Shown piece after piece: positions 25,201 through 64,000 of a DNA stretch of 64,000 bases. Position 1 is the first letter of the stretch; every line of letters begins with the position of its first letter. The notes beneath the pieces are model-generated. The model was not told the origin of the DNA and searched no databases. It worked only from the letters and a program-made list of their open reading frames with translations. Made by a program: the position numbers and the translations under genes. The stretch is from positions 6,696,001 to 6,760,000 of the forward strand of contig CM119384.1 of the NCBI GenBank assembly GCA_051294905.1, written 5' to 3'. The stretch comes from Botryllus schlosseri. Its lineage: Eukaryota.

Positions 25201-26836
25201 CAAAATTAGCCTAGATCAAGTGCGAAATCAAAGTCAACAAATTCTTCGTTCAAAATTGTTGCCCAGTGTAATCGGTCGACCTCTAAACAAAAGTAGTGTC
25301 GTGTTCTTAGCTCGGAAAATTGTTCGGCAAGCTATAGCGAGGCCGTTTGTTGTTGGTTTTTGTGGCTTCGCTTATGTCTCGAAAATTTCAGGCCACTGGG
25401 TCCAAATAATTGTCTTCCATTTATGCTCTATGTAGGCACACACCAAGTGATTTCCAAAAGCGCATCGCGGTATACATCGATAGCGCTAGGTTATTTTACT
25501 TATACCGCATTTACAATATTTAATACTGCAATTATCTATTTACTCTTCTATCATGTCGAAATCGGGTGTAATGGTAGCCCGATGTGCTCATGTCTTGTGG
25601 CGACATGTAGCACTACAATTAACATGTGCTTGTGTGGGAGTCGTTTATATATCAGTTCATTCGTGGTGTTGGATTGAATATTAGTTTATTTTTAACTGCG
25701 GACAGTGTTATATCATCATCGCTGAAACACAAATGGTCAAAATACGAAGGCAAGTAACGCAACGTCTTTTTTCCGTTAACAGTGGTATCCTGGGCATGTT
25801 TGATTTTTGTCATCCTATATATTGCAATGTACAGCATAGGCATGGGGCCTGTGCCTTTTATTCTTCTCAGCGAAATGGTACCGTTCCGAGGAAGAGGCGT
25901 TGCGTGCGGAATCGGAACTATGAGCAACTGGTTATGCGCGTTCATCCTCACCAAGTCGTTCATTAATCTTATCGTAAGTATAGATATCGAGCCATTTACT
26001 GCAATACTATATATTTCCCACGGAACAGAATGCTCGTTATAGGAGTACATCATTATGTGCCAGGCCTGCAGAGGATTTTGCAAGTTAATTATCGATGTAT
26101 TGCTTCGAAGTGTCACAAGTTATGCACAAAAAAAAACCTGTTCACACTCGCTAAAGATGCTCTGCTCAGTTAGCTCTCGTGAGATACTCGTCAAAGAAAA
26201 ACATCTGCTTATCCCCACCCATTATTAACCTAGCCGAGAAATCCATTTGGCTATACTCGGGACCTATAATTTAGTATTCACCATACCACAACATATCTGG
26301 GAATTGCCTCATGATAAATGAAGAAAGTTTTTTCGTTTTTTTTACTTAATTAACAAATTTTATAAGCAGATCATATCAAGAAAGCGTATTTGTTTGGTGC
26401 GGGTGCAATCATGCAGACTTTGACTTGTAAGGTCTTATAGGTCACCCCTATCGAATACTGTTTGTGTTTCTGTTTTGTATCACCATTGATGTATGTGTGT
26501 TTGTCGTGTATTTCGGTTGTTCATAGTCCGTCTTTTCTCCAGGAACTTTTTTCTGTACATACCGTCTTTTGGATGTTCGCGGCGGTCTGCTTCGTTGCTT
26601 TGATTTTTACTCGGCGATGCGTCATCGAAACGAGCGGCAAGACGTTGGCGGAAATTCAAGACCTTCTCGCAGCGGACACCAGAGACACGAAATCCTTTGC
26701 CGATGAGAAGAAATTTCTCAGCTTTGACAAGATCCTTTGTCATCCCGTCTCGCCTAAAGCGTGCGCTAAATCGACAAGGTCATCTAGTGTAGAAGAGCAA
26801 AGTAGAGACTTGATCGATAATTGCGCGGACGTGTAA
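13224..26836 (+). CDS. MFS sugar porter, class III GLUT (SLC2A6/SLC2A8/Tret1-like), 9 exons, ~547 aa
   Basis: Exons 13224-13397, 13558-13764, 14488-14635, 14695-14855, 15688-15847, 16553-16717, 22859-23002, 25783-25973, 26543-26836; all GT-AG, phases compatible, total 1644 nt. Sugar-porter motifs: D-x-x-GRR twice, YISEVSP..LRG, PES, QQCSGGN, GMGPVPF..LSE, ETSGKTL. The start codon could lie further upstream. Confidence 0.92.
15289..15444. mobile_element. Old miniature Penelope-like pLTR insertion in inverted arrangement
   Basis: Homologous to both ends of 19166-21051, including the hammerhead core and tail. A short inverted second arm starts near 15399. Decayed direct repeats TTCCAACAGAAAAG/TTCCTACAGAATAAAAG flank it. 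Confidence 0.75.
19224..19257 (-). ncRNA. Minimal hammerhead ribozyme motif in the PLE pLTR (left arm)
   Basis: Exact reverse complement of 20993-21026. Confidence 0.75.
19359..20108 (-). pseudogene. PLE ORF 3' part: RT thumb/linker plus GIY-YIG endonuclease (left arm)
   Basis: RKINLIGTLVHRALMICS thumb region; SNVVYEFKCHCDCGYVGRT...RINQH is a GIY-YIG variant with Cys/His; ends LESTFIK..P.LC.QKE. RT core absent. Confidence 0.9.
20112..20891 (+). pseudogene. PLE ORF 3' part: RT thumb/linker plus GIY-YIG endonuclease (right arm)
   Basis: Same protein as the left arm, extended by QYLRWNSFSP. Open frame but 5'-truncated. Confidence 0.9.
20993..21026 (+). ncRNA. Minimal type I hammerhead ribozyme motif in the PLE pLTR (right arm)
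   Basis: ACCC-CTGACGA-GTGTCAGCC-GAAA-ATAT-TC-GGGT: complete core, 4-bp stem I, 1-bp stem II and palindromic AATATT stem III, the form known from PLE hammerheads. Predicted cleavage after C21022. Activity not tested. Confidence 0.75.
23696..25268. mobile_element. Unclassified TIR element with CACTGG/CCAGTG ends, nested in the hAT MITE
   Basis: Imperfect inverted terminal arms of ~120 bp or more (...CCATCACGTCAAGTTTTT near 23790 vs AAAAACTTGACGTGATGG near 25150). TSD unclear. Confidence 0.55.
24250..25010 (-). repeat. Decayed repeat, possible pogo/Tigger remnant; second copy at 50420-52600
   Basis: Reverse-complement homology to 50420-50796 plus 52280-52600. The decayed frame LTK*EKIRLLDKVEK only weakly resembles a CENP-B-type HTH, so the class is uncertain. 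Confidence 0.5.
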
Positions 26837-26877
26837 AGATGTAGTACTTTTCAATATTATGTATTCTATTTATACAA

Positions 26878-26883
26878 AATAAA
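26878..26883 (+). terminator. Candidate polyadenylation signal of the sugar transporter
   Basis: AATAAA about 40 nt after the stop codon. Confidence 0.45.
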
Positions 26884-28661
26884 AGACTGACACATGGGCT
26901 ATTTGTCTTCGAGTCTTCGGATGTCAACGATGTTGTCCTATAGTTAATTCCTGGTACTGCAACAGGTTGGAGCGCGGTACAATGGTCACCAGTTCGCGGA
27001 ACAGTCATCACCGGTCCGCTGGGGCATTATTAGTCTGTAATCAGACTGGAGGCATCTTTAGATATATGCCATACACGGATTATTTGACTCGGACATGTCA
27101 AATGATATCCTGACATTTATATCGACTTTCCAAAATCAAGACAAGACTTATCGAAATTCAATATCTGCTATCAATCCCGGTCTTGTTGTATATAAGAAAA
27201 GAGCCTATCTTCTCTTTGATTTGTCGATTAAGTGGCGATTATAAATATAGTGACGTTCAATTTTTTGCTAAACTTGTTCAGTTCATTTTGAATGCATGTT
27301 CATTATTCAGTTAAGAATGTGTTGAAAGATATCTGCGTCCCCTATACTTTAGGGGGACAGCGGTAGAATTATCATGACCGGTCAGCGAGACGAAAAGGTT
27401 ATGGACCACTATGGCGTATTCATCCAACCGCAAGTTTTAATAAGCTACTTGCTATAATGACAAAATATGTACGGGAGGCAGTTCCATCATCATTCATAAT
27501 GATGATGCAGCAAAGCAAAGTTGATTTTGTCAATACTGTACATGGCGCAGATATTGCTAAGTTTGTTACAGGAATATACTTCGTAGGTGGTCAGTATTCC
27601 GAATGCTCATCGAAAGTGATTGCTCAACAATATCGACCTTGCACGGCTACGAAATTTGAATATGTCCATACGAAACATTGCGTTCGTGGATTCTTTGTTA
27701 ACTTGATCTAAACATCAGCTCATATGTGGAGAGTAGCCTATACAACCCGCAAATGCAGCTTTTACTATTTACTGTATATGCGATCCACTTGTGCACGATA
27801 ACAGTGTGACTGACTGGACAATGCAGACCGTGAGATAAGAATAAAATACCAGGTGAATCATGAAATAGTTCGGAGAAATACCTAAACTATATGCACTTGA
27901 AACCCACGAAATATGTGTAAAATATTTTTATCGGACAATGGACGACAATCCACAACGATTATTAAATCAGTTCATTTTTAATGAGCACAAAGTAGTCCGT
28001 TATTTCTTTGCGGTTCGAACTGTCATATACGGTATTTGTTGATGCATACCTTTCTGTTGCTTTCGTGTAAAAATTTTCGGAATGAAAAAGTGTTCGTAGG
28101 TGAAACTAAACACAAATCAAACTTTACCTCCATCTGCGCGCTAATCTGCTATCAACAATAAGAATTTGGCGATTTTACGCATTGAATGTTATTAAAGGTT
28201 ACTAGTTCGTACCATAATAGCAGACACATTGAGCGGATGCACGTTTAACCAGTTGTATATGTCTGTTACAAACATTGTTGTGAGCTTCGTTTGATTGGCT
28301 GTCAGTCTTTCTGACCCACTCTTGACAAATAATGTCTGAGCCCAGTATTAAAGTGGCAAGTGATGACGAAACAATTTTGATATACATCTTTGCGATTGTT
28401 ATCGCGCAATAGACAATAGATTTCCTGCGTTGCGCCAAAAAGATATCTAAATTCCGATGGTCTTAAAATTGTGATTTCAATTACGCGCGGAAGAGGAGAT
28501 ACTGATCGAGTAATTCCCCAGTGGCGAATAGAATTAACGCCTGCAGACATCTTCAATGCACATAAATACAGACTTCACCAGGCGGAGTATAGTATATTCG
28601 GACGTTTTAAGCGGAACGGTTAAGATCATATTAGTGCCTGCTGATCTGAATGATTGGCGAC

Positions 28662-31600
28662 ATGGTATTTTCTGCAAGATCTATGTGGCTGGTTTATTCT
28701 GTCGTATGCGTCTTCTTCCACGTAGCGAATTCAAAAGGTATATGCATATTACTTATAAAGGATGGCATTCCTGTAACAAACCCACGCTTTCTTACGTGCG
28801 TTCCAAATGTAATCAAAAATAGTGCATCTATGCAGAACATAGACTGGCCTCCGTGACTGCGATGCAATATTTTAGGCATCCCCTTTTTTGTTTGTGACTA
28901 CTTTTTTACTAAACTTTTCTATGGTATGCCCATTGGCCAATGGTATGATTATGATTACTAAAGCCATATATAGAATAAAACCGAAGTTTCGTAGTGGAAG
29001 ATGATTGTTGGATGCCTGGAGGACTGCCTGTCCTTGCGCTTAGCTCGAATTGAAAATATCAATGGAACTATGGATTTGATTAACAGATACTCCAGTCTGA
29101 TTATATTATTCAGCTAGACCGATTGTTCTTAACCTGTTCTCCCCTCCCCACAAATAAATAAATAAATGAATGAAGACTAAAAACAAATGTGCCTGACATG
29201 AATGTAATGACAACATATAACAGTGGTAGTTGGCACCGCTTCTTCGCAACCAAATCGTTCAATTGGGGTTTAATTCCAGCAGATGAATAACTTATTGAAT
29301 AGTTCTCTGAGCTTATACTTATTCCTATAGCATCAACAGATCAACAGGTGTAAAAGAATGCCACTTCGGATGAGTGCCACTGGGCTAGAACTTGCTGAAA
29401 AATTGACTACTTGAAAGAACGGCAAAATAGCAGTGTACTTGTTTATAACTGTTGGCTACCCCTACCAATTACTTTGGAAGATCAACTGACGAAAAGATAC
29501 TATATATTACGATTGCAGAGTGCTATGGCGTCGGAAACCCAGATGGTCCGGCGGCGCTTGTTGGAACGATACACGCCAACAATACAAATTATTTCGAAGG
29601 CTGCAAGATTGTTCGGGGCAATATCGTTTTCCAAGCATACGCATTCGGGGGGTACGTATAAGCACCAAACGTAATGTTTTTCATTCGTTATGCCAAAGTT
29701 ATGAGATGGGTCTTAATAATTATGTCATTGTAATGATATACCTTTTAGCCGCGAGTATGGATGATCAAAATACCGCAAATAGATATTATTTTATATATTC
29801 AACCGAATCCACGGTGTATGTATGAATTAATGCGTGTCACGTATTCAAAAATCGCCAGAGAACACGTCTTCTCTGATACAGCGTGACGATTCACTGGCTT
29901 GATCTGTTGAATTAATTATTTTCGAACTGCAAAATTTGTTTTGATATTGTTGGTGGGTACAACTAACACAGAAGTTATTGGATAATTTTATGTTATTATT
30001 GAAGCACTGATTTAATAGTAATATATTTTGCCTGACCTGACGTATTTATTTTTCACTGTAGCGACAAGCAAAATTATATCCCACCCATGACCGCGCAGCA
30101 AGTGATGAAATCGTTTTCGTCTGTTGAAGTTATAACCGGTGAGTGTTATCTCAATATTATCGCTAACTCCAAATACCTGAGCTTAGTCTACACCGGACTG
30201 GGAAAAAATTTATGGCAAGCAATAATTATGAATCGTTCTGTGTATTCCACATACTTTCAAGTTTTGTTGGCGATTTCGTGGAGCAGAATAAATCGATCGT
30301 GACTTGCGCATTTCAAATAGTTGCAGACTTGAGTTGGATACTGAACCTGTTAAGATATTTCATTGAAAGCATAAATGATTGTTTGGTTGCCATGTCGAAA
30401 TACAGCGACTTCTGCAGATAAACTTCTGTACCGATAGGCCTACATGCACTCAGTCACCGTGTTGCGAGGTCTATATAGCGACTCGGTGTGAATCGCGTTG
30501 TCGCAGACGGGCACTGATATTTACAAAGCGTGTTTTGAGTAGGCGCACAATTATTTCAACCCGGTATTGAAATATGTTTATTCGTTAAAGCGCTTTCCAT
30601 CTTTTGCAGGATATCTGAATATTTTGGGTTGGCATAAAAATCTTTCTGACTTCAGCGCTTTTGGCAACTTGAGAACCATTCGAGGCGTCCAACTTTTTCG
30701 CGGAGTTGCCGCGATTGTGATTCAGGACACCACCGCCGGCCGGCCGTATCACCTCGAATCGGTACGTTTGCTAACGACTCAGCGGATTAGACGTGTTATA
30801 TTAGTTATTCGTACCGTTATCGACATCCCCGACCAGAAAAAAACCTGGTACTGGCAGCTTCCTAATCCTGACTATTTTGCACCTGCTGAGCACCAGGTCT
30901 ATATATACTTGCTATTACATGTTTAGTGGCAGCGGAGCCGACTGCTTCAGACATCCAATACAGTTCGCCAGTACTGTGAAAAAAATCATCATGGGCGAGG
31001 GGAATTTTCCAATATAGGATAATTAATGGTATCGTGGCGACATCATGCGGCACCACCACTGTGGTCATCTCTTATTTTCATGTCGCTTTAGCCGTTGATT
31101 GTGCTTTGGTCAGTTCACTCTCAAGTGCTGCTTACAATAAATTTGTTACCCGCATAAGTACGTTACAACATCGATTTATAACGAGGTGATTCGATTCGAA
31201 ATGTCGTAGGTAAAATTCCCCGGTTTCTCTTGAATGGTAATGAATCTTGTTAATTCCACTGATTTCTTCACCTGGGAAGTGCTAGTGATATTTCGTATGA
31301 TCCCGAATGGTGTAGCGATTTAATGTCGCTGGATTTCTTGTTTTGACGAAAACATATTGTGTTTTAGGCTAACATGTGACTCACCGAAATGTATTGTCAA
31401 AATATCGGTGGCGGGAAAACCTAGGGAGAAAATGGCGGAATCTTTAATGTACTGTATATATATTAATGTCCAATGTCCATAGATGCCTAAACAGCTGGCG
31501 CCAAATACTTATGCCCTTGAAATTCGATACCACCAGTACAATCGGTTAATATGATCACATTGGATGAGAGAGGATAAAAACGATATAATACATATATATT

Positions 31601-34600
31601 ATACCAATATTATTGACCAAATTTAGCGAATTTATTTCGCATCGAGCGCGAATAGACATAATATAGCACATTCCAACTCTCGCTTTGGTAGTGGGGGAAA
31701 GGGCCGGCGAATATGGGGGTCTGGATGTCGCAGCCCCCTGAATTTAGGTCGCTCAACCTAAATGAGGGGACCAAGACCAACGTTTTTGGAGGTGGGGGCT
31801 AACGAAGTAATGTTTCGGTCCTGTAAATACGCATATACTGTCATGAGAGCCTTTTCTAGGTCAAAACTTTGGGATTTCGGTCATTGAAAAGCATCGAGCG
31901 CGGGAACGTCTACATTGGATACATGCGAAACCTCTGCTACCTGGACACTGTAAACTGGACGAGAGTCTTGAAAAGCCCAGTTAAAGAGAGCAGATTCGTA
32001 TCCGGCGTGATGCTCCGAAACAACAAAAAATGTTACGGTAAGAAACAAAAACAAAATCGGCTTGACTATACTGTGACTTCATCCACGTCAAGTATAGGCT
32101 ACGTCAAAATACATATGTGGCGTCGCGTCATGGTAACCTAATCAATCCCATCTGAATTTTTGTTCGCCCATCCTAAATGTCCATCCTGGACCCGCCTGTG
32201 GATACGTTGTCTTACACAAATGCAAGGCAGTGACCAGTTTGAAAAATGTGGCTCAAATTTGTCGACTATGTGATCATTGATGCATGCGTGACTAATTGAC
32301 TATGCTTCATTATAGCTGTAACGGGATTTGGTCGTAGATCTGACTTACTAAATTCCAACCTCAGAAGCCGCTAAATTCTAACGTTAAATAAGTTCCCACT
32401 CCGCACTGGAGCTTTCTTTCAATTCTTCATAAAATTTGTCTTGTGATGGGGTTTGTGAAGTTTGAATTGGCGCGATTGTGGTGAAAAATTAGGGTCATCC
32501 ACCTTCGAGTTTCTCTTGGCTTCTCTTGGGCCGCGCTCAGACCAGGACCGTATGAATTAGCATTTCTGGATTACGTGAACTACATCATAACACCAACATT
32601 GGCTTCATTTATTATCTATGTTACGTTGACAACATTGGGGAGCAATCATCGAAAATCCAAGGCTCATTAAACTTCCATCATCGAATTATTCCATGAAATA
32701 CCAAACATTGGGGTGAACTGCTTCAGACTCGAACACCAGTAGATTGCATGTGAAATTTTTGGAGCTTGAGTATAGGCCAGTGGTTCTCAAGCTTTTTCAC
32801 TGTGGGAGCCATTTTATGAACCTCAACTCTGTCGGGAGCCGCATGATGGCACGAATAACGTAATTTATTGAGAATAGAAAAATATCATCAAAAATGGTAT
32901 CAACGAAATGGTGTACGGCTAAAATAGCGACGGCCTTAATAGCGACGGCCAAAACACCGACTGGCCACAACAGCGACGGCCATAACAGCGACGGCCAAAA
33001 CCGCGATTGGCTCAAACAGCGACGGCCAAAACAAATACGACAATTTCCCCAGACGACACTGTGACAGCGGGCACTCCCCATACGGACAACTTCCGAAACG
33101 ACGTTACCCAGCCACGTCCCTTCACCGATGGTATACCGAGGTATACCCTTCACCGTTGAAGCCGATTGCGGATGATTTACAATTTACATTCTTCCAGATA
33201 GTAAATAGATAGTGATCACCACAGATTTAGCGTCACAACATGTTTATTGAGACTTAATCCACAATCTTTCTGAGTTCCGAGAGCATGTGAATTGAGTTTG
33301 GATGAACAAGGCGTGACGCTAAATCTGTGGTGATCACTATCTATTTTGCAACTTAGTGCGAAACTTGAAATTGAATTTGATTTTTCACAAGTTTGTCATA
33401 ACGAGGTTTCATCGTGGAGGAAGCTGTGCACAAGAGCTGTTTCAGATGACGATCAGTCAATCGATTGCGATATTTGCTTTTGATCCTCACTAATTTGCTG
33501 AAAAGGGCTTCACATACATAGGTTGAACCGAACATGCAGGCATTCTTCGATGCGTTAGCTATCAGGTTGGGGTATTTTTCTTCAGGAACAGCACCCCAAA
33601 ATTCAAGGAGTCCATTGCTTTGAAACAACAGTCGCAATTCTATATCGGACTGCAAGTCCAGCAGTTCCATCTGAAAAATATCAGGGGCAGTGGCGGCATC
33701 TACTGCCATTGGGTTTGAAAATATATTCATCAGGGGTACGGAATGATGCATTCCCTCTATTCGACGTTTAAACCCGTCAATCAAGGTACTAATAACCTGG
33801 TCATATGTTTTGAATGATCCATTCTGTCGGTGGTTTGAAAGCGTTACAAAATGTGTCGTAACACCCTCCTCTAGGTGCTTTCTCCAAAGACACAATTTCT
33901 CAATGAAACCAGACACTGTCCCGTACCAGGCGTGACAGAGCTTGTTATTTCCTTGTAAGTTCCGATTTAGTGACGACAGGTGTGAGGTAATATCCACCAT
34001 GAACGCCAAGTCAGCAACCCAGTGTTCGTTTCCCAACTGAGGGATGTCTTTCTTTCCTTCGACAAATATTTTAATCTCAGGAAGTAGCGCGTAAAATCTT
34101 TTGAGGCATGCAGCTCGGCTTAGCCATCGTACAGCGGTGAACATGATCAAGTCTCCATGGTCAGCATCAATATCGGTGAGAAAAGCCTTGAATTTTCGAT
34201 GGTTAAGTGCGTTTGCTCGAATCCAATTTACGGTCGATATTACTATATCTGTCACATTGGACATCTTTAATGATTTAGCAACAAGACTTTCCTGGTGTAT
34301 AATGCAGTGTTGCCAAGTCACAGCGTCAAGATTCTGTTCAGCACGCCATTTGTTGACGAGTCCTTGAAGACCTAGATTTTTGCCGAGCATTGCTGGGCAG
34401 CCATCTGTCGCCAATGAATATAATTTCGATGGGTCTAAATGCGCTTCTTGAAGAGTAGCATGAAATTCACGAAACATGTCGGTTCCCTTCGTTGTGCCAT
34501 GAATAGATCGCAAAGTAAGAAACTCCTCGCAAATCTTGAAATCTGGCATGACTCCCCGGATGAATACAGCTAATTGCTCTATGTCGGTAATGTCGTTAGT

Positions 34601-36388
34601 GCTGTCAAGAGCAAGCGAGTAGTAAGAAAAATCTTGCGACTTGTGAATAAGTTGCTCATGCAGATCTTGGGATATGCAATCGACACGACGCGTTACTGTA
34701 TCATTGCTAAGCTGCAATTTTTTAGCTTTCTGCTGAATGGCAGGAGAACAATTGTCTTCGGTAAACAAAACAATAGCCTGCTTCGTAATTTCGCCATCAG
34801 AATATGGCTTCATATTGCTGGCCAATAGATGACTGATCTTATATGATGTTATTGTTACCTCTTCGGGTTCTTTTTTTTTAAAAACATTTTTCCTTGTTTG
34901 CTACGCTCTGCTTTCAGACATTCTAACTTCCGTTTCCTTGATTCACCTTGATAGACGTCGTATTTTCCCGCATGTGTTTTATAATGCCTCTTAACGTTGA
35001 AAGATTTTACACCGTTTATTATTATAGGGCACAGAAGGCATTTCGCTTTGCCGTTTTCCTCAATTTGAAAATACGCCTCTTCCCATTCACTTTGAAAGGC
35101 CCGATTTTCTTGCACAAGGGTGCGAGATTTCTTTGCAGGTTGATCTGAACCTGACATTATCATTGAACCAAAGTCTCCGATATTTTCTAACGCTATCAAG
35201 ATGAAAGCAAAGAGTAAGAAAATAAAGTACCTGCAGTTACCCCAAACGTTGATTGTCTTATTGACCGAGTCTCTTGTCACCCGTATTCTAATATGAGCCG
35301 CCGTCTCGAGCGAAATAAACTTCGCCCGTCTCATTACAGACACCTGATTAGGCTTAGGTCAGACGGTCAGAGCCTTCAGTAAAGCAGTAAAGGTTCGGAT
35401 TTAAAGCCTACCGAAATTACTATCGGTAATGTTACGTCACAACCCGTACAACTTGTATTACGTAGGATTCTATTGTGATCAGGGAATGACCTTCGCGTCA
35501 GTAAACGTGAACATAAACGTACATTTGTTGTGTTGAAGGCGCGATTTATTTATGATCATGAATAATTAGAATTTCCGTAGAAGCATCAATGATTTCACAT
35601 CGTTAGTGAGAGCCGCACGGAGAGCAGTCGAGAGCCGCATGCGGCTCGGAGAGCCGCGGTTGAGAATCACTGGTATAGGCATAGATACAGATATTTTTAT
35701 ATTGAACATACCTGCAGAGCTGGTCGATGTATATCCAGGCATATAGGCCTACTACTTAATTTACAGGGCGTTAGGTTGCTAAATGTTACAAATATAATAA
35801 GTAGGCCTATTTATAGGGTTTATAAGGCAAGCCAAATTAGAAATGAAATGACTGAAAATAATTTGAACTTTCACAAAAACGTAATTTGTCAACATCCCGA
35901 TAAAGCCCTGATGAACATGCAATGTTGATTTCTGCAGACAGCGCAGACTGGCATATTATACCGTTATTCCAAAAGAGCCCATTTCACAAATGTTCTCATT
36001 AATTGAAGGTACTCTATTCATATTTTCTATTCTCTCAACAGGCGAGACATGTCATCCAGCCTGCGGTGATGGTGGATGCTGGGGCCCGGGGGCTCGAGAT
36101 TGCCTGAGTTGCGAGTATTTTACATTGGGAGATAAGTGTGTCCTGGAATGTGGCGAAGGTTTTTACCACAGTGGAACAGAATGTCAACCTTGTGATGAGC
36201 AATGTGACACCTGCTACGGCAGTGGACCGGGTAATTGTATCCGATGCAAAGAGCTACGCCTCCCCAGCGGAAAATGCGGTGGTCCGTGCCCCGACGAGAT
36301 GTGCGTCGATGTCTTGACCGACGAGTGCAGACCGTGCTTTGAATTGCTGAAAAAGGGATACAAACAAGAGAGCAACGTACTTCATTGA
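28662..36388 (+). CDS. Predicted secreted EGFR-like protein: signal peptide, domain III (L2) and partial domain IV; 6 exons, ~320 aa
   Basis: Exons 28662-28737 (MVFSARSMWLVYSVVCVFFHVANSK; alternative ATG 28650), 29519-29651, 30062-30138, 30610-30761, 31860-32037, 36042-36388; GT-AG, phases 1/2/1/0/1, 963 nt, no internal stops. Motifs CYGVG, GCKIVRGNI, AFGG|D, VEVITG|YLNI, NLRTIRG, LGFRSLKSIERGNVYI..NLCYLDTVNW, CHPAC..GCWGPG..DCLSC. L2 and domain IV exons are high confidence; the signal exon link and terminal stop are moderately confident. Confidence 0.8.
32778..35672 (-). mobile_element. Near full-length Buster/Charlie (SPIN-like) hAT transposon in intron 5 of the EGFR-like gene
   Basis: TIRs CAGTGGTTCTCAAG/GTTGAGAATCACTG; perfect TSD GTATAGGC; GAGCCGC subterminal repeats. 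Confidence 0.95.
33353..35163 (-). pseudogene. hAT Buster-type transposase (~600 aa) with one frameshift at 34871-34884
   Basis: BED finger CLLC...KRHYKTH; catalytic SLALDSTND, LATDGCPAM, HCIIHQ, RWLS and FGSTYVCEALFS; hATC C-terminus. Two ORFs are joined by a -1 shift in a T5A9 run. Confidence 0.92.
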
Positions 36389-38338
36389 AAATAATTGCTA
36401 AGTATCGAAAAACCGGATACAGTGTTGGAAGCTCTGAAATCGCATAAAATGTACTCTTGAATTGTTCATACACATTGTTGTTGTTAATGCGTTTGTGGGT
36501 CGTTGGGAAATGTGGATTGAGTTTTGGATATGTACCGACGATGAACTCTGTTTAAAGCAAGATTAAATCATTTTCCAGTGGTTTTTCGTACAAGTTATAC
36601 CTTTAAATCTTCCCCAAATCATCTACAAGTAGGTGTGCAATTCATTCGTTCTCGATAAAGCTCATACTCGAAATAATGAGTTCTACCTATTTGAGATAGT
36701 TATTTCGAAGGCACCGGACCAGGCTCAATCAAGTCATCAGGGATAGTCGGACGTAGTTTGCATGAAATATCATTTTCATTATTGTACAGAAAAGAACAGT
36801 GGCGGCTCGTCCTATAGGGCAACTGGGGCATTGCCCCACCTAAAATTCTGTTCAATAACAATTTAACCATTTATAGACGCACAGCGCTCAATATATATCG
36901 AGATCACAGCGAAACCCGCGTTCTTCTTGTGCTTTCGCTTGCAAACGCCCATACATAGCGAAGTCTCTGCGAAAATCGAATTCTCTTCTGTGTTTTCGCT
37001 TTGTGAATGCCTAGCCGGGGCTTGCCCCGGTAGCGCTCATAACAAGCTTTCACTATCTATTCTCTCAAAGCCGCGCACAATAAAGAAACGGTGATTTGCT
37101 CTCTCCTATTCGTAAAATGGCCGAGCAACCGGGGCAAATATGCCTACTCGCCCCTAAGGTGTGATGTAGCAATCGTATCTATATCTGAACTCGGATACCG
37201 TGATATGCGTTGAGTCGACCGTTGCTGGTACAGGTCGATTTTGATGGTGTTTCACACCATGATAATTCTTGAAACTTGGTATGTCATGTCGTGATGGTGG
37301 TATTTAACACTGTCCTAAGTTTCAGGGTTTCTACTCAAAGTTTAGGGTAGTAATTCCGTTTCCAAAGTCGAGTGTGTGCTGATCGGTCATGTATCGCAAA
37401 CATATTTCACGCAAAGCCGGTATTGGTCTCCATTGATTTTAACGATGCTCCTTAGCTAGATCCGTCATGAACTTTTACATGGTATGTCTTGATTTTAGTA
37501 TCGAACGCTGTGCCAAGTCTCAAGGTTGACACTCAATGATTATAGGGCAGCAATTTCGTTATTAAGTTCGAGTATGGTAGAGATGTGCGCTGATCTGACA
37601 CTTAGCCTACCTAACGCATTGCGGATTTCACGCAAAAGCCGGTGTATCTGTGTTCCATACTGAGATAGGTGATGAGATGATGATATCATGAAACAGTTTA
37701 CTAACATCCTCGGTTTGCATTCAAATATTTAGTTTTATTTTATATTCTCCAATGTCAATTTCACCGTGGAATGGCGGCCTTCGGGCCATTTGCTCACAAT
37801 TACAACCCCTGTCAAGCGCGATAGCTGTTTCGTTTTCGATGGCGGCTAACAGCTGATCGCTTGATCAGCCGATTCCTCAGTAAATATTACGCAAAATTCG
37901 GCGTTGATCTGTTCGTATTAATTTTGACAGTGTACCATACCGAAAACGGCCATGAGGCTATACTTCTCGATGATTTCATGTAACAGTGTACCAAGTTTTC
38001 GGCTTTCATCCACGTATTTATTCGGTAATATATTTTCCGAAGGCGATTTTGCAGCAGACATATAGACACTATAGACCGTAAGCCGTATGTGTCGTGTGAC
38101 AGTCTCCAGCCTCAAGGCCAGAATCTCCCAAGCTGTACCGGGACCGAATTTCCGAGGCTGCTATCCGTAGTTCTTCAGAATGATGTTTTGGATTCAATAT
38201 GACATTTCCTTGTCCAATCTATGAGATAACAATTGCGTATGTGTCCGAACTCGTTGACCTTTCCAGTTAGGCATACGCAATCTCTCGATTTATAGTCATT
38301 TCCATTTCTGCAGATAAGTAGTCAGGTCAAGTGCGAAC

Positions 38339-40560
38339 ATGAATCGTGTTGAATCTTTGCTCCGTACGCCGTTTAGCCAGCTGCCTTTAGAGCAAAAATT
38401 AGAGGTAAAGCGACTAGGTCCGTATCAGCCTAGAAATTGCCCATTGATCCAATCGTACGCCGGAGGAAAACGCACTCGTGCCTTTTCTTCAGCGCATTTC
38501 GATAAAAATGAATGGCTTACTTATGGCGAGGATAAAAACGCCTTGTTTTGCTTTTACTGTCTTTTATTCGACGGTACCGGAAGCAGTGGCTCTTGTTGGA
38601 ACAAAATTGGTTATCGCGATCTGAAGCATTTGTCAGAGCGTCTGAAAACGCACCAAAAATCCCACGTGCACATGGCTAGTGCAGTTAAATATAAATTGTT
38701 TGGCAGAGTAAATGTAATGTCGCAGCTCAATGAAAGTTATCGCGTATCAGTATGCAAGCACAATGAGCTTGTAGATAAGAATAGGCATGTTCTCTCTCGG
38801 GTGATTGATGCCATTAAATTTATTGGAGTTCATGAATTGCCTCTTCGAGGCCACGATGAGAAGGAATGCTCTCTCAATAGGGGGGTATTTTTGGATCTAA
38901 TTAAATACACGGCTTCCATTGATAGCATTTTGCGCGAACATCTCGACACCGCGACAGTAGCTAAGGCAGGGGTTCTCAACCCGCGGCCCGCGGGCCGCAT
39001 GCGGCCCGCAGACGATTATTTTGCGGCCCGCGACATCTTTCATTATAAACGCAATTTCTACTGGCACGATATTGTTACATATTAATTTAGCTACTTAGCA
39101 CTCTTATCGCACCGTCTCTCTATCGTTTGATTACTGATTCTATGATGTGTTCTGGTTTCTTGATATATGCTCGAGTGTAGATTGTTATTGTTTTGAATTG
39201 GTATTCGGCTGGACTCTTGTTCAAGATAATTCCGTTGTGTAGTACACTTTTAAAGAGTGTTTCACTCACCGCGAACGGTTTGAACAGATACAAGAACAAG
39301 GAAGGGGAAATTAAACGGCGCGGGTAACTGGGTTTGTAAGTCCGCGTGGAACAGTTAATTTGCTTTCTCAGATATAAATGGAAAACCCGATGTGACATGT
39401 TTGTCGAAGATCAGTTGCCGTAACGAAGTGTAGAAGCTTAAAATTATACCACGACACTTAATTCTGAAGTTATGCGTATCACCTGATTAAAAAAAATCAT
39501 TGCTAGCTAGGTGTCAAGCCCACCAATAATCCATATTTCGAGGCATTGTTAAAATTGTCGACGATGTTACAGACGCATGGTTCAAAATTGCTTGGAATAT
39601 CGCTAAATCCATGAAATTTGCCAGAGAAGGTGTCATTTAGAAAGAACTTGAACATACTGTGCGAATATTTGCTACTTCCAGAACCAGCAAGGACAACATC
39701 ACCTGACAAATGTTGAAGCTACAGTAGTCTGATTGAACTGTGACCAGAAAAGTAACAGCAATGTCAGTCGCTCTGTCATCGCATGTTCTGAAATACGTTA
39801 CCGCGCAGACCATTTTAGCCTAGCATCGGACGAGAAGCTGCTGACTCCACAGATCCTGCAAAGCTAATTATCTAAGTGCATTATTTCAGAGTGGAAATGC
39901 TGGAAGGGCAAACGCGTGAAGAGCCGAGCGAAAAACATCAACTTAACAAATGTGACTCCTATCTGCACGACTATTGGTGCAGGGCTCCAGCCATGGATGG
40001 AAAGGAGTAGGGTTGATTGATTTGTTCAGAAATGACCCGAACGCCAGACTTCTTCTCATATCACTGAGAGCTCAAAGTGATAATGGTCTTTGTAACGAAA
40101 AAGTTACCGTAATTCTATACTTGCTCGGTCACCTATTGAAACAGAGAGTTCGGTTCTCTGGTGGAAGGGTTTGAAGGTGGATATACCGACTGGGCAACTA
40201 ATGCGATGCACGCTCAATGACGGGTTATACGTGCGCCGCTGGAAGATATTATATTCTCACAGAAAACAACAACTGAAAACTTACGAACACTGCTTTAGAA
40301 TGCATAAAAATATACTGAACGACCGTATACGACTAGTAAATAGGCTACAGTAGCCTAAATTTAATAGTAGCCCGCAAATACATAGCAATAATTTTCTGCG
40401 GCCCGCAACGTCTTTTGCTGTTAAAATGCGGCCCGTTATACAAGGGAAGTTGAGAACCCCTGAGCTAAGGGTACCTCAAAGACTATTCAAAATGATGTGC
40501 TTGATTCGATATATCACATCTATCTTAGTTCGCGTACATTTTGTAAAATAATCATTTGAA
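38339..40560 (+). pseudogene. N-terminal hAT transposase fragment (TTF-type zinc finger/DUF4371 region), split by an insertion
   Basis: WLTY...ALFCFYCLLF...HLSERLKTHQKSHVH and LPLRGHDE...NRGVFLDL. The frame resumes after the nested element as GTSKTIQNDVLDSI. Catalytic core absent. Confidence 0.8.
38967..40462. mobile_element. Buster-type hAT derivative with decayed transposase traces
   Basis: TIR CAGGGGTTCTCAAC/GTTGAGAACCCCTG; perfect TSD AGCTAAGG; GCGGCCCG subterminal repeats. Confidence 0.92.
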
Positions 40561-41502
40561 TAAAAAACAATGAATAAAACATTTGTCACCGCACTTCAAG
40601 TCACGCCACCGGCAAACCTCTCGCGGCACCTACGTTAAAAATCATTGTTTACGGGAAATTCATGTGGCCATCATGAACGTTGAAAAACGCTACTGTGACG
40701 TCATATTGATAACAAGTCGCTTGCGGCCCTTGCCCCACCACCCGATATTGTCACGAGCCGCCACTGGAAAAGAATGTAAATATAACAATAAAATAGTTTA
40801 CCGAGGTAAAGTCTGCAGCGGGTAATTCTAGAACTGAGAGTGCAAAAGAGAGAAAAAAGCATGCATCCGAGCTCAACTATTCAGGCGCGGCGACTCATTG
40901 AAATAATGGGGATGCTGCAAAAACAATCATTTGTGATTTTGGGGATCACACACACGAAATCGTACGAGATGTAGGCCTACGGGCTTTCTGCTTGCTTCGA
41001 AGACATGTTTTCTAACACTGACACATAGCGGATTTTACAGAAATGTTGATTACAGACCAGAGATGATGGCTGTCCGGTTCCTAATTTTGGAACGATATTT
41101 CCACGTTCTAAGATTTTGTTAGGCTAAATTATTTGGACAATAACGTGAAGACCCGTATTCATTATAACGCAATCAAAACGGATGGCTTGCACAGCTTGAT
41201 TACAACCGGGTAGGTCTCAAATATTTGTAACGTTGCAAGCCCCATTGTGTTAATAGTGGAATATTTATGAATATCACTTTTAGAACTGTATTATTGAATA
41301 GTTATCGAGCCTGTAACTCACAAGCTATTCACATTCACCCGAGTTCCTAACTACCATCCGCCTGTAGTTGAAGAGCAAGTAATGATTATTTTATTTCTGA
41401 GAGAAACAATGCGAAGACCACTTCAGTACAGCGGTCAACATATATCCACACATGTGTCATTCTCGTCGTACCGTGTCTAATGTACATTGAGTATGTTTAA
41501 GC

Positions 41503-42825
41503 CAGTGGTTCCCAACGTGGGCGATTTGTCGGTCCAGGGGGACGAAAATAGCCAAGGGGGCGATAGGGGGGCGAAACGGACGAAGGGGGCGATAGGGGGG
41601 CGATGGCGCGTTGAAATGGCTACATTGGCATCCATGACCGTAACTGCCACACCCAAGCCCCCAATTGAGATGCGGGGCCCGAACTCGAAGGGGGTCCACA
41701 ATTTGTCGTGAATTAACATTAATTATAGAGTACTATTTTGAAAATTTAGGCAACTTTTTCAAAAAATTTTCGCGCTGCGCGCCATTTCGTGGTCGCGTAT
41801 TTCTTGCTTATTGGATACCCTTCCTCCAAGAAATAATACGCATGAGGTATAGAAATGGGCATCTCGGCGTCAGCCATTATCACACCATGACGCACCAAGA
41901 CATATGAAGTTTCAGGCCATGTAACATGCGACTCCGAGAAGTGTGCCAGAACGAGAAAACCTTGGCGGAAAAGGACTGCCTTTATGCTGACCGAATTCGA
42001 TATATATACGATATACATATATATTTAATTGTCCATAGGCGCCTAAATGGCTGGCTCCAAATGTTCCTGTCCTGTCCAATCAGAACCCCACAAAAATGCC
42101 ATCTCGCAGAGAAAATTAATTGCCAGTGCAGAAATACCAATTTGAATTCGTGTGCGTCTTTTAGTTTAGTACGTATGGGCGATTTGAATACCTTTTGACA
42201 TAGCAGACAGGCCACAAAATGTCATTACGTAGCGAACGGGTCCGCCCGAATATGTTCAATTATTATTAACGGGCCCTACATTTTCCAAGACACGTCACTC
42301 AGCTTTACCGGTAAATCTGAATACATGAGCAGAGAGAGGATGGAAAATTGACAGCAATATTTATGCAATTCCCGATCATATTGACCGATTCAATCATGAA
42401 TAATAGAAATTTTTTGCGCTTCGCGCGAATTGAGCCGACTAACTAAAGAGTCCAACAATTTGTGCTGAGAAGTAGCGATATAAAGAGGTATCGGGGGAGT
42501 TGGGTCTGAGGGGTGCAGAAGTTTGCTTTATCGCCCTATATAGAGGGGCCAAGACCAACGTAATGGGGGGGGGGCTGACGAAGTCCTGTTACGGTCCTTT
42601 GGCAATCAAGTCGGAGAAATCACCTTTTTTGTTAGTCAACTCACCAAAATTTAGCTAGAAAAGTGTAATTTCGAGGTCGAGCCGAAAAGTTGACCTTTTT
42701 ACTAAGTCAACTCGCCGGTGATTTCAGTCTGTATGCGCATTTTTGTGTTCCCAATATTTGGGGGGCGATGATCGGTGTGGAGTTTGAAAAGGAGGCGATG
42801 AGTCGAAAAAGGTTGGGAACCACTG
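41503..42825. mobile_element. Non-autonomous Buster-type hAT element
   Basis: TIR CAGTGGTTCCCAAC/GTTGGGAACCACTG; perfect TSD GTTTAAGC; GGGGGCGA subterminal repeats. Confidence 0.92.
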
Positions 42826-44289
42826 GTTTAAGCAATCAATTAATCAATCATTTTATTCCCAATGTCATCAGTTCAAAATATCATAGGAATTGCGTTGCAA
42901 TGAAAAGATGGGAATGAATCGAAACGGCTTGCCGAAGTCCGTATTAATCCACAGCCGCCTTGGAAGCTATGTTGAGAAAGGAGACGCGTATCGAATGAGA
43001 AATGCAGAAGCTAGCATGGAAATTGACAAGCAGAGAACGCAACGAACAGGCGTCAAATACGATGTGCACTGTGCAGTCAAAGTCGATATGTCAAAAGCTT
43101 GATCTGGTGATTTGAAATGCAGCATTGGCTATAGTATTGATCTAGACATCCCTGATATTGATTCAGTAGAAAATGTTGAGAATTTTTATTTGGAAAGAAA
43201 GACAAAATAGACTCCATACTACTAGACCTGACTAGTGACTACTCCAGAACGGCCTGATAGCCGGCGCCAGGCGAAATATGGCTCCACACCAATCAAACTT
43301 AACTGAGCGTCATGTTTATCGGCAATTCACGTTGATTAGGTGGTGTGCCTATTTGAAAGCCGAGGGCGCACGACACGCAAGTGCGTTGTACTTCAGCTGA
43401 TGATAGCTACAGTAGAATTAGGTCCTCACCAATGTTTCCTCTAAGCTGCCCCGCGCACTGCTGACAAAGTCATCGCGCACAAGAAAGCCGAAGTGATGAC
43501 CTGTTTTTAGTCGTAACGCACTGTTGTCCAACGGATCCACTCGGTCAGTTGGTGACTGCGCGCAGACTCGTGAAAAATTAGAGGGAACATTGTTCATCAC
43601 AAATTTCCCAATAAGTAACCTAATCCAATGTTTCGCCTAACACGCGTAAGCACTAAGCACCCTGGGCCCTTGTATATATTTCATGTTCATGTTCATTATA
43701 AATGACGGAAAATAAGGCATCACTTTTAAAAGGGTAGACTCGTCTAATGTGACACAGGCTCGTGTGACGTTAGACACTATGACGATATTCCCATGTAAAT
43801 TACAAATGTCCGATAGTCGCTAGATGGTGCCCTGTTACTGATGGTGCAAGACAATTTCACTTGCTATGAGCAATAAATGTTTTTCATTAATTATATATAT
43901 TAATTCGTTTGTTAAGTTGTGTTGGTTTCATTTCTTTACGACACATTTCAATACGTCATACGTAAGTATACTAATTGTGCGTGCGTTAGATGCCAATACG
44001 TTACACGGCGACTCTGGACAAAACTTCATTTCCAAAACAGGATTGGCTACCAGAACACCTAAAATTGTTGATTCTTCTTGATCAATCGTTTTATTGAAAT
44101 TTTCGTCAGATCAAAACACCACAATATGTGGCGGGTATTCGTCGAACCGTTTGACGCTATTACGGTGGTCTGTAGGATTCTCTTCCCGGTTTTCAGAAGC
44201 TGCCTTGGGCGGCTAAGATATAATTAATATGGGTTATTTAATTAATAATATGCAGAATTTGACGAGAAATATTCATAGAAACATACTAC

Positions 44290-44610
44290 AACTGTCTATG
44301 AATATTTGGGGTTATTGAGAGCCGTAAGGGCCACAACGACGCCTTGACAATGATACTGAGAACCCGATGTTGTAGTTTATGCACTGAGTCGATTGCATTA
44401 TTGCTCGCAGCTCCGGACCAAATAATTCCGTATTGTAATAAAATCGACAGGGGGTTACCAAATAGGCAGCACAAACTACATATACCCTCGATAATTCTGG
44501 CGTTATCGATTGTAGGTGACTCTTCCAGGACATGTCCGGTTCCAGTAACACCCCGAGGTATTTGGCATCTTCAGCGTTAAAAATCAGTTGAACAGCGATG
44601 ATAGCTCGCT
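44290..44610 (-). mobile_element. Decayed CR1/L2-like LINE RT fragment
   Basis: Frameshifted AKYLGVLLEPDMSWKSHLQSI...LQYGIIW...VHKLQHRVLSII, typical of the post-RT region of CR1/L2 ORF2. Confidence 0.7.
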
Positions 44611-46150
44611 CTTCCGACCGCCAAGTAAAATAACAAGTGAAATACAAGTTTGACTAATTTGGCCATGTTCTAGAAGAGGTAAATCGACAAGAGCTCACAT
44701 CTTTTACTGACGCGTATGCGACATTCACTGGTTTCTGGTGTGTATCACTATAAATGCTGTAGCCTACATAACAAAAGTTAGAATGACATTTTATAGTCCA
44801 ACAATCGCTAACAAGTTCCTGACCTGAAAGTCACACAGTTAGTCAGGGAATTGAAGCAGATAATGTTGCACACAGTCGCACATGCGAGCAACATGCTGAA
44901 ATAACAGACATATTTTCTTGACAATGCTTATGAAAGTACTTCATCACAGTAGTAGCCTACACTGCACAAGTGACGTATTGGCCATTAAAATACATTTGTT
45001 CGTAATCCCAATACACATTGCTTTGGTTAGTCAGTCAGCCAGTCATTCAGTCTGGCGCAGTCATGAGAGCATTGTAACCCACGTATTTTGTTATTCAATG
45101 TGACCTACCATACAGAAAATATATGCACAGTAAGATTGGGGACCTGATGAATGAGAAAGAAACATGTAAGAACGAAACGGTTATCTAATGCGGAAGAGTA
45201 AAATTGAACTTGCATAACTACAAAATCAAAATTATGAAAGACAACTACACAACAACACTGTTATCGGATATATTCACGTAAAAGAACTTAAAATCATTTA
45301 GTTTAGTATAGTTTAGTTATGTAAGTAATAAAAACGACATAAAGTTTTGATACTATTCTGATATCCATTAATAATGACTATGCACAACTATCCAAAACGT
45401 TGATCATTAATTTTGGCATTCGTTCAACCTTCAAAATCTCAAGACAACGCGACTATTTGTCAATGCGCTTTGTACTAGTTATTCTGCAGTACATGAGTAC
45501 CGCCAGATAGTTCGACGTGTTTGAGTGAATGTTCGGTACCATTAGATTTCTTAGGGCATGGTCACAGTTTTGCCTCATTTCTGTATCTATCTCATTCTAC
45601 TTCGTTCTTTGTATTTCTTTGCCTCGTCCTTTCCTTTCCTTTCTCGTCTCTCGAGTGTCTCGAAATTTTTGTCCCGGAGCTTCGGTATGTTTTAGTCGAT
45701 TCAGTTGCCTCGCGGCCGATGGTATTGTTGTAGAAGTTATAGTTAGCGAAGGGCAAAAATGATAGCTTTATGTGGAGATGTTCTTGCACTGACTGTGCCA
45801 AATTTACTTCGTCAGTCCAAGATAACGGAGCATGCAACCAATGTTTGATTTAAGGCGTGCAGATCGTTTTGGTTAATGATTTCGCCCGCGTGACAATATC
45901 GCAAGGGGGCTCGCGCCCCAGTTTGAGAACCACTGATACTAAAGAAACTATAGTTTTGTGGTGTAATTGAGTCATGAAAAACGTTGATAGATATAGATAT
46001 CCGGTACGAAAGACGACCGCCAAGTATCAATTTCTGAAAGTACCTAATAAATGACTGTATGAAGGAATACCGATAGCGAATTTGTATTTATGCAAGTGAT
46101 ACGAATGTATACAGCAAGAACTCGGTTTAATTGGTGAAAATTCGTTAATC

Positions 46151-63900: not shown

Positions 63901-64000
63901 GTGAGTCCATCTATACAACAATTCGATCATTTCATTCCTGTCGCTGTACAAATATTCAACTGCAAATATTGTGCGTTACGACGATGGTGTTTTTCGCATT

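What the first reader, a model, noticed from the sequence alone, without database searches (positions are those of the whole stretch)
28650..36388. Stand-alone gene for a secreted EGFR half-ectodomain (domain III plus partial IV): candidate decoy or ligand carrier
Seen: a hydrophobic signal-peptide exon (28662-28737, phase-1 donor AAG|GTATAT) splices in frame into an exon starting E-CYGVG (29519). Four L-domain exons and one Cys-rich exon follow, ending in TGA at 36386-36388; the 963-nt frame has no stops and carries NxT/S sequons (NNT, NLS, NWT). No domain I/II exons lie between it and the transporter stop (26836), and no TM or kinase exon was found before the next signal exon (46151). Established: the motifs and intron positions (AFxG|D phase 2, EITG| phase 1) match EGFR domain III rather than domain I, and isolated EGFR domain III binds ligand. 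Secreted decoys exist for related receptors (Drosophila SDR for InR, nematode IRLD proteins), but the soluble EGFR isoforms I know retain domain I. Inference: a partial EGFR duplicate that lost domains I-II and everything after domain IV, and may act as a secreted EGF-ligand sink, carrier or ectodomain partner. I do not know of a described gene with this architecture, but could not search for one.
Basis: partly seen in the sequence, partly recalled or inferred. Interest (0 to 1): 0.9.

Follow-up and report, generated by a model that had tools for sequence, protein, structure and literature searches.

The report
Secreted EGFR domain III–IV gene
This is a real, expressed six-exon gene for a short secreted protein made only of the second ligand-binding domain and the following cysteine-rich domain of an EGF receptor, a cut-down receptor relative whose likely job, still untested, is to bind something outside the cell and tune EGF-receptor signalling.

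Summary
Six GT-AG exons (28650-28737, 29519-29651, 30062-30138, 30610-30761, 31860-32037, 36042-36388) give a 324-aa open frame: signal peptide, one receptor L domain, then 18 cysteines of GF_recep_IV type.

RNA confirms the model. Four junctions appear in two transcript contigs and in raw reads. The fifth junction shows as a loose end that spells the start of exon 6. Transcripts begin at 28606-28636, and no RNA lies between this gene and the transporter upstream.

The L domain is domain III by BLAST, by PDB positions and by a tree (100/98 support). No domain I/II, transmembrane or kinase exon lies nearby.

One contig's length fits a poly(A) site 20 nt after ATTAAA at 36562. Two relatives from other marine animals have open frames that end at a similar place. 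A donor-like GT 9 nt before the stop is not excluded.

No predicted protein with this architecture turned up. The closest described cases are kinase-less EGFR or insulin-receptor paralogues that keep the whole ectodomain. Decoy function is inference. The scan has an unchecked note of a second membrane-less EGFR paralogue about 61 kb beyond this window.

The parts
28606..28649 (+). Transcript start region and short 5' UTR
   Evidence: RNA contigs begin at 28606 (X9) and 28636 (X25). Depth is 0 from 26900 to 28499 in all four runs. An in-frame TGA lies just before the ATG.
28650..28737 (+). Exon 1 coding part: signal peptide. ATG at 28650, with a second in-frame ATG at 28662 in a better context. 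Phase-1 donor AAG|GTATAT.
   Evidence: Model. It holds the only hydrophobic stretch of the protein. Junction 28737|29519 is seen in X25 and X9 contigs and in 38 X23 reads.
29519..29651 (+). Exon 2: start of the L domain (E-CYGVG ... AFGG), with the NNT sequon
   Evidence: Matches ErbB2 residues 321-360. Junction 29651|30062 is seen in RNA.
30062..30138 (+). Exon 3: D-KQNYIPPM ... VEVITG. It carries the Asp of AFxGD.
   Evidence: Junction 30138|30610 is seen in RNA.
30610..30761 (+). Exon 4: L-domain middle part, with the NLS sequon and a 9-aa insertion (DTTAGRPYH) relative to canonical EGFRs
   Evidence: Recep_L_domain 22.5 bits. Matches ErbB4 residues 376-413. Insertion seen. Junction 30761|31860 is seen in RNA.
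31860..32037 (+). Exon 5: end of the L domain (GNVYIGYMRNLCY, NWT sequon), phase-1 donor
   Evidence: Matches ErbB3 residues 420-462 at 39.4 bits, against 13.6 bits for domain I. The loose end behind 32038 spells exon 6 in 38 reads and 2 contigs.
33353..35343 (-). hAT-type transposon ORFs inside intron 5. They are not part of the gene product and explain the 4-kb intron.
   Evidence: Dimer_Tnp_hAT E 1.8e-09 plus a BED-like zinc finger. The matching intron in relative L001 is about 380 nt.
36042..36388 (+). Exon 6 coding part: Cys-rich domain IV-type region with 18 Cys, a hydrophilic tail, and the stop at 36386-36388
   Evidence: GF_recep_IV E 3.8e-15. Matches EGFR 481-572 and LET-23 493-576. 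L001 and P0030 match at 40-43% identity, and their open frames end at a similar place.
36389..36587 (+). Inferred 3' UTR, with ATTAAA at 36562-36567 and a poly(A) site near 36587
   Evidence: The X9 contig carries 546 nt after exon 5. If unspliced it ends at 36587, 20 nt past ATTAAA. This was not seen directly.

Best explanation
Shown: a transcribed, correctly spliced six-exon gene. Its open frame encodes a signal peptide followed directly by an EGFR-type L2 domain (domain III) and a domain IV-type cysteine-rich region. The mature part has an even 22 cysteines. The gene has its own transcript start, separate from the upstream transporter gene. No domain I/II, transmembrane or kinase sequence lies around it.

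Inferred: the message ends at the TGA in exon 6 and is polyadenylated about 200 nt later, so the product is a soluble secreted glycoprotein of about 295 residues after cleavage. It arose by an old partial genomic duplication of an EGFR-family gene that began in the intron before domain III and picked up a new signal-peptide exon.

Most likely mechanism (inference): it acts outside the cell as a kinase-less binder in the EGFR pathway. The best guess is a ligand trap or buffer using the domain III face. Affinity would be modest because domain I is missing, though high expression could offset that.
For: Gene model and frame.

Splicing and 5' end: one search shows the four junctions and the exon 5-to-6 loose end, zero depth from 26900 to 28499, and contigs starting at 28606 and 28636. 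The X25 contig is 1525 nt at depth 137, against 5-9 for the neighbouring transporter.

Domains.

Tree: one search places the L domain inside the L2 clade (100/98) on a long branch.

No other EGFR exons nearby. No TM-like open segment at 36389-46150.

3' end: the X9 contig length fits ATTAAA plus 20 nt.

Constraint: no nonsense or frameshift variant appears in the RNA, and pN/pS is about 0.39 from the 28 listed exonic variants. Relatives L001/L002 and P0030 are closer to this gene (152 and 88 bits) than to seven canonical EGFRs (113 bits or less). They keep the cysteine pattern and have similar tail lengths.

Ligand face: the Asp of AFxGD, which is the ligand Arg partner in human EGFR (my knowledge), is kept.
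Against: The stop codon and 3' UTR were not covered by reads. A GT lies 9 nt before the stop here (AAC|GTACTT) and in L001 (AG|GTATGT), so a spliced longer form is not excluded.

Several positions that contact EGF in human EGFR are changed, for example the equivalents of F357 and Q384. A 9-aa loop is inserted near the binding face. Isolated domain III binds ligand only weakly in human EGFR (my knowledge).

No signal-peptide predictor was available. No binding data exist.
Confidence: 0.62

Rival explanations
1. The same gene has a different C-terminus. Exon 6 is spliced at the GT 9 nt before the stop (or at 36230) to a small downstream exon, giving a membrane-tethered or longer protein instead of a soluble one.
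For: GT donor-like sites sit at 36377 here and at the matching place in L001. The X25 contig has 882 nt after exon 5, more than the first poly(A) site allows. The share of sampled words in 36042-36600 (0.25-0.28) does not tell the two forms apart.
Against: The X9 contig length fits the ATTAAA poly(A) site. AAC|GTACTT is a poor donor. The sequence after 36230 is conserved as coding sequence in L001. No TM-like open segment and no EGFR homology occurs in the next 9.8 kb on this strand. No conserved downstream exon is shared with L001.
Confidence: 0.13
2. It is secreted, but it is not an EGF-ligand binder. The L domain plus Cys-rich scaffold has been re-used to bind something else, such as another receptor ectodomain, a matrix component or a non-self molecule.
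For: The branch is long (1.89 against a median of 0.99). Identity to any canonical domain III is only about 32%. Contact positions are changed and a 9-aa loop is inserted. Six non-synonymous differences cluster in 20 nt, in the loop matching human EGFR 461-467.
Against: The Asp of AFxGD and the hydrophobic character of several contact positions are kept. The gene sits next to EGFR-family paralogues (scan note s1-300953, unchecked).
Confidence: 0.2
3. It is a transcribed relic of a partial duplication with no function.
For: It is not represented among predicted proteins in the collections searched. pN/pS is not very low, at about 0.39 from a partial list.
Against: The frame is intact in the reference and in RNA alleles, and the cysteine count is even. 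Expression is high (depth 137). At least 14 listed RNA-type runs from 5 studies held words of exons 1-5, and 14 (plus 6 of unknown type) held words of exon 6. Relatives at 40-51% identity in two other animals keep the frame and the cysteines.
Confidence: 0.04

Closest known systems
Harvestman (Phalangium opilio) EgfrB, a kinase-less EGFR paralogue (bioRxiv 10.1101/2021.01.11.426205)
   Same: A separate germline gene, not a splice form. [quoted passage not shown] Its function is also unknown.
   Different: EgfrB is described as keeping the L domains, the furin-like domain and GF receptor IV, which is the whole ectodomain. The gene here starts at domain III and has no domain I or II.
[quoted passage not shown]
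   Same: Receptor tyrosine kinase paralogues that lost the kinase. SDR is secreted, binds the ligands and antagonises the receptor. Their origin was shown by shared intron positions with the parent receptor.
   Different: They derive from the insulin receptor, not EGFR, and keep the N-terminal L1 and Cys-rich parts. Ligand binding is shown for SDR and is untested here.
C. elegans IRLD proteins HPA-1 and HPA-2 (cited in PMC9262388)
   Same: Kinase-less proteins with receptor L domains that modify EGF signalling.
   Different: They have only weak homology to both insulin and EGF receptors and belong to a nematode-specific expansion. The gene here is a clear EGFR domain III-IV homologue (E 1e-37 to 1e-41).
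Soluble vertebrate ErbB isoforms (sEGFR, p85-sErbB3, Herstatin), the tumour deletion EGFRvIII, and recombinant isolated domain III
   Same: Truncated ErbB ectodomains can be stable outside the cell. PDB holds isolated EGFR domain III chains of 201-214 residues and a 357-residue EGFR chain whose aligned positions fit a domain III-IV fragment. EGFRvIII likewise lacks domain I and most of domain II (my knowledge).
   Different: The natural soluble isoforms are splice or read-through products of the receptor gene and keep domain I (my knowledge). EGFRvIII is somatic and membrane-bound with a kinase. The gene here is a separate germline gene.

Membership tests
EGFR/ErbB receptor tyrosine kinases | L2 (domain III) and the following Cys-rich domain IV | tested here: met
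   Pfam Recep_L_domain and GF_recep_IV. BLAST gives 114-145 bits to III+IV of 7 EGFRs. PDB positions are 321-572. The L domain lies in the L2 clade at 100/98.
EGFR/ErbB receptor tyrosine kinases | L1 and Cys-rich domain II with the dimerisation arm | tested here: not met
   The transcript starts at 28606-28636, and the signal-peptide exon joins directly to domain III. No EGFR-like exon lies upstream in 28 kb.
EGFR/ErbB receptor tyrosine kinases | Transmembrane helix and tyrosine kinase domain | tested here: not met
   There is a stop in exon 6. No kinase homology appears after 36400 on this gene's side. No TM-like segment occurs in the protein or in the next 9.8 kb. The 3' end was not seen in reads.
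Secreted kinase-less receptor decoys (SDR or EgfrB type) | Separate gene with a signal peptide, receptor-derived ectodomain, and no anchor or kinase | tested here: met
   The signal peptide was judged by hand (positive n-region, 13-residue hydrophobic core, A-x-S before the cut) and not by a predictor.
Secreted kinase-less receptor decoys (SDR or EgfrB type) | Binds the receptor's ligands and antagonises signalling | not testable with these tools
   Only residue comparison was possible. The Asp of AFxGD is kept and several other contact positions are changed.
Secreted kinase-less receptor decoys (SDR or EgfrB type) | Keeps the complete ligand-binding ectodomain (both L domains) | tested here: not met
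   Only one L domain is present.

The most novel reading that the evidence does not exclude
This is the first member of an old, conserved family of secreted 'domain III-IV only' EGFR derivatives in marine invertebrates. With the membrane-less and full-length EGFR paralogues reported nearby, it would form an extracellular regulatory module. It could buffer ligand at low affinity, hand ligand on, or bind receptor ectodomains in trans. That would be a mode of EGFR control not described in model organisms.
Probability: 0.15. Interest if true: 0.8.

Novelty: new variant of a known kind. Interest (0 to 1): 0.55.

Why it matters
Kinase-less receptor paralogues are a recurring way to tune growth-factor signalling, but the described ones keep the whole ligand-binding ectodomain. 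A germline, well-expressed gene that keeps only domain III and IV raises a direct question: is half of the EGF-binding site enough to do something useful in vivo? It is also a natural counterpart to engineered domain III fragments and to the domain I/II-less tumour variant EGFRvIII. The gene appears to be missing from predicted protein sets, so it would be overlooked in surveys of the EGFR pathway.

Tried and rejected
- **Word-indexed protein search with exon 6:** no candidate. Its length filter would have excluded a 324-aa protein anyway.
- **Same search with an alignment of one EGFR segment plus the exon pieces:** nothing found, but the test was flawed. Most columns were gaps, so the profile collapsed to about 27 positions. 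It says nothing.
- **Exhaustive representative search with exon 6:** dominated by multi-repeat furin-like proteins. No hit exceeded 48% identity. None of the short hits fetched had an L domain. Only P0030 and P0045 looked like relatives.
- **Cluster look-up and contigs:** only short contigs, and no DNA for P0030. L002 is the same species as L001 and adds nothing.
- **Metagenome scan with the exon 6 alignment:** only a canonical full-length EGFR gene (L003).
- **tblastx of L001 against 26000-47000:** no conserved exon beyond exons 5 and 6.
- **Self-BLAST of 36389-37600:** no repeat that would explain the end of the X25 contig.
- **Run-index word shares:** fit expression of all exons at about 4% allelic divergence, but cannot decide the 3' end.
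- **Splicing at 36230 as the main form:** rejected, because the sequence after it is conserved as coding sequence in L001.
- **A 'trans-tether' role for domain IV:** considered, but the human tether residues D563, H566 and K585 (my numbering, anchored) are not kept.

Full report
**Observation.** The exons are 28650-28737, 29519-29651, 30062-30138, 30610-30761, 31860-32037 and 36042-36388. All introns are GT-AG, with phases 1, 2, 1, 0, 1. The frame is 975 nt from the ATG at 28650. It has no stop before TGA at 36386-36388.

The 324-aa product has one hydrophobic stretch, at the N-terminus. It has 22 cysteines after the predicted cleavage site (VANS|KE) and three sequons, NNT, NLS and NWT. Pfam on the exon pieces gives Recep_L_domain on exons 4 and 5, and GF_recep_IV (E 3.8e-15) on exon 6. 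The 4-kb intron 5 holds a hAT transposon on the other strand.

**Transcription and splicing.** Sampled words of exons 1-5 were held by 14 listed RNA-type runs from 5 studies. Words of exon 6 were held by 14 such runs, plus 6 of unknown type. The shares fit exon-only content at a few percent allelic divergence.

I laid two contig runs and two raw-read runs on 26700-32699. Depth was confined to the five exons. Junctions 28737|29519, 29651|30062, 30138|30610 and 30761|31860 appeared in both contig runs and in 38, 38, 21 and 16 raw reads. A loose end behind 32038, seen in 38 reads and both contigs, spells the first 30 letters of exon 6.

Contigs start at 28606 and 28636. Depth is zero from 26900 to 28499 in all runs. 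The gene therefore has its own start, separate from the sugar-transporter gene that ends at 26836. No upstream exon feeds exon 2. One contig is 1525 nt long at word depth 137, against 5-9 for the transporter. No indel or nonsense variant was listed in the exons.

**Domain identity.**
- Against seven full-length EGFR-family proteins, the product aligns to domains III+IV with 114-145 bits. It aligns to domains I+II with only 55-75 bits.
- Against solved structures, the pieces fall in order: exon 2 on ErbB2 321-360, exon 4 on ErbB4 376-413, exon 5 on ErbB3 420-462 (39.4 bits, against 13.6 for domain I), and exon 6 on EGFR 481-572 and LET-23 493-576.
- A maximum-likelihood tree of L domains places this one inside the L2 clade with 100/98 support. 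It sits on a long branch, 1.89 against a median of 0.99. The L domain of the neighbouring gene falls with L1.

Using the PDB coordinates as anchors and my memory of the human sequence, exon 6 covers the cysteines equivalent to C482 through C596. That is most of a vertebrate-type domain IV. It is less than the longer Cys-rich region of invertebrate EGFRs.

**Surroundings.** tblastn with the seven EGFRs finds no EGFR-like exon in 1-29500 and none between 36400 and 53500. The next gene starts with its own signal-peptide ORF at 46151. Its L1 exons lie at 53536-59469, and it runs off the window. The + strand of 36389-46150 has no open segment with transmembrane-like hydropathy. It contains another transposon fragment at 38339-39085.

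**The 3' end is the weak point.** I had one read-laying run and spent it on the 5' part, so the stop was not seen in RNA. Four pieces of indirect evidence support it:
- The X9 contig carries 546 nt after exon 5. If unspliced it ends at 36587, 20 nt after the ATTAAA at 36562-36567. By my estimate about 5% of positions in that region would fit a hexamer this well.
- The X25 mRNA-like contig is only 1525 nt at high depth.
- Nothing receptor-like lies downstream.
- Two relatives have open frames that end at a similar place.

Against it, a GT lies 9 nt before the stop here (AAC|GTACTT, a poor donor) and in relative L001 (AG|GTATGT, a good one). A spliced form is therefore not excluded. I put the soluble form at about 0.8-0.85.

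**Relatives.** The exhaustive search gave two short single-stretch hits. P0045 comes from scaffold L001 of a marine-biofilm metagenome. The sample id appears in PMC6355793. P0030 comes from a short Logan contig.
- L001 carries both exon 5 and exon 6, with the same phase-1 intron, here about 380 nt long. It is 51% identical to this gene over 162 residues (152 bits), against 113 bits or less to canonical EGFRs.
- P0030 is 41% identical over its exon 6.
- All three keep the cysteine framework. After the last CxxC, each has a non-canonical hydrophilic tail of 15-17 residues.
- The window protein and L001 each have 18 cysteines in exon 6 but reach that even number differently. The window has an extra Cys in DEMC and lacks the third Cys of CxxCxxxC. 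L001 has the reverse. This fits a truncation that is real at the protein level.
- These contigs are genomic ORF calls, so their stops could also be intron read-through. I treat this evidence as moderate.
- No full-length family member was found.

**Constraint.** Of the 28 exonic variants listed, 12 are synonymous and 16 are not. That gives pN/pS of about 0.39. The figure is rough, because the list is truncated and X23 also contains a more divergent allele or paralogue.

**Function (inference).**
- The Asp of AFxGD is kept in this protein and in six of seven canonical EGFRs. In human EGFR it pairs with the ligand's conserved Arg (my knowledge).
- The equivalents of V350, F412 and I438 stay hydrophobic.
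- The equivalents of F357 and Q384 are changed.
- A 9-residue loop (DTTAGRPYH) is inserted near the binding face.

Isolated human domain III folds on its own, as the PDB chains of 201-214 residues show. It binds ligand weakly (my knowledge). The most likely role is a soluble binder in the EGFR pathway, best guessed as a ligand trap or buffer. A different binding partner is a serious rival.

**Comparison and novelty.** Kinase-less receptor paralogues are known:
- harvestman EgfrB, which has the whole ectodomain and no transmembrane or kinase part;
- fly SDR and insect DR2, derived from the insulin receptor;
- nematode IRLD proteins HPA-1 and HPA-2, which modify EGF signalling.

A survey of metazoan EGFRs (PMC4914847) gave no mention of truncated or receptor-derived soluble forms for the words I searched. 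I found none that starts at domain III. I rate this a new variant of a known kind.

An unchecked scan note (s1-300953) reports another membrane-less EGFR paralogue about 61 kb beyond this window, next to a full-length kinase. If that holds, this locus carries several extracellular EGFR derivatives.

Noticed in passing
window 46151-64000: A second EGFR-family gene on the same strand. It has a signal-peptide ORF at 46151, L1 (domain I) exons at about 53536-53736, 56049-56228 and 59299-59469, and the start of the Cys-rich domain II near 63834. It runs off the window. Its L1 is only 37-51% identical to the canonical EGFRs fetched.
   Followed up: partly
window 28650-32037, RNA run X23: Besides reads that match the window, X23 holds reads whose neighbouring exon parts are too divergent to lay. 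Loose-end consensus sequences at 29517, 29651, 30609, 30763 and 31859 have agreement of 0.59-0.67. This points to a second, much more divergent haplotype or an expressed paralogue of this gene.
   Followed up: no
window 31980-31999: Six non-synonymous differences occur within 20 nt in X23 reads (V191I, K192T/N, E193G, S194G, V197A). They lie in the loop that aligns with human EGFR 461-467, near the ligand and cetuximab face. This may be a hypervariable binding loop, or the paralogue noted in the X23 item.
   Followed up: partly
window 33353-35343 (minus strand) and 38339-39085: A hAT-type transposon with two long ORFs (490 and 162 aa; Dimer_Tnp_hAT, BED-like zinc finger) fills intron 5. A DUF4371 plus zinc-finger transposase fragment lies downstream of the gene.
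   Followed up: partly
protein P0140 (696 aa, another organism): This representative protein has EGFR domains I-IV followed by a heptad-like, coiled-coil-looking tail (my reading of the sequence). It has no transmembrane or kinase part. It is another kinase-less EGFR ectodomain in public data and is not the product of the neighbouring gene (37-51% identity).
   Followed up: partly
window 26462-26836: The last exon of a sugar-transporter-family gene (Sugar_tr C-terminus) is transcribed at low depth in all four runs. It is cleanly separated from the EGFR-like gene by 1.6 kb with no RNA.
   Followed up: partly
L003 (metagenome contig, 14.7 kb): A compact, complete canonical EGFR gene (domains I-IV and kinase within about 7 kb) from an unidentified eukaryote in a metagenome. 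It is useful as a comparator for intron positions.
   Followed up: no
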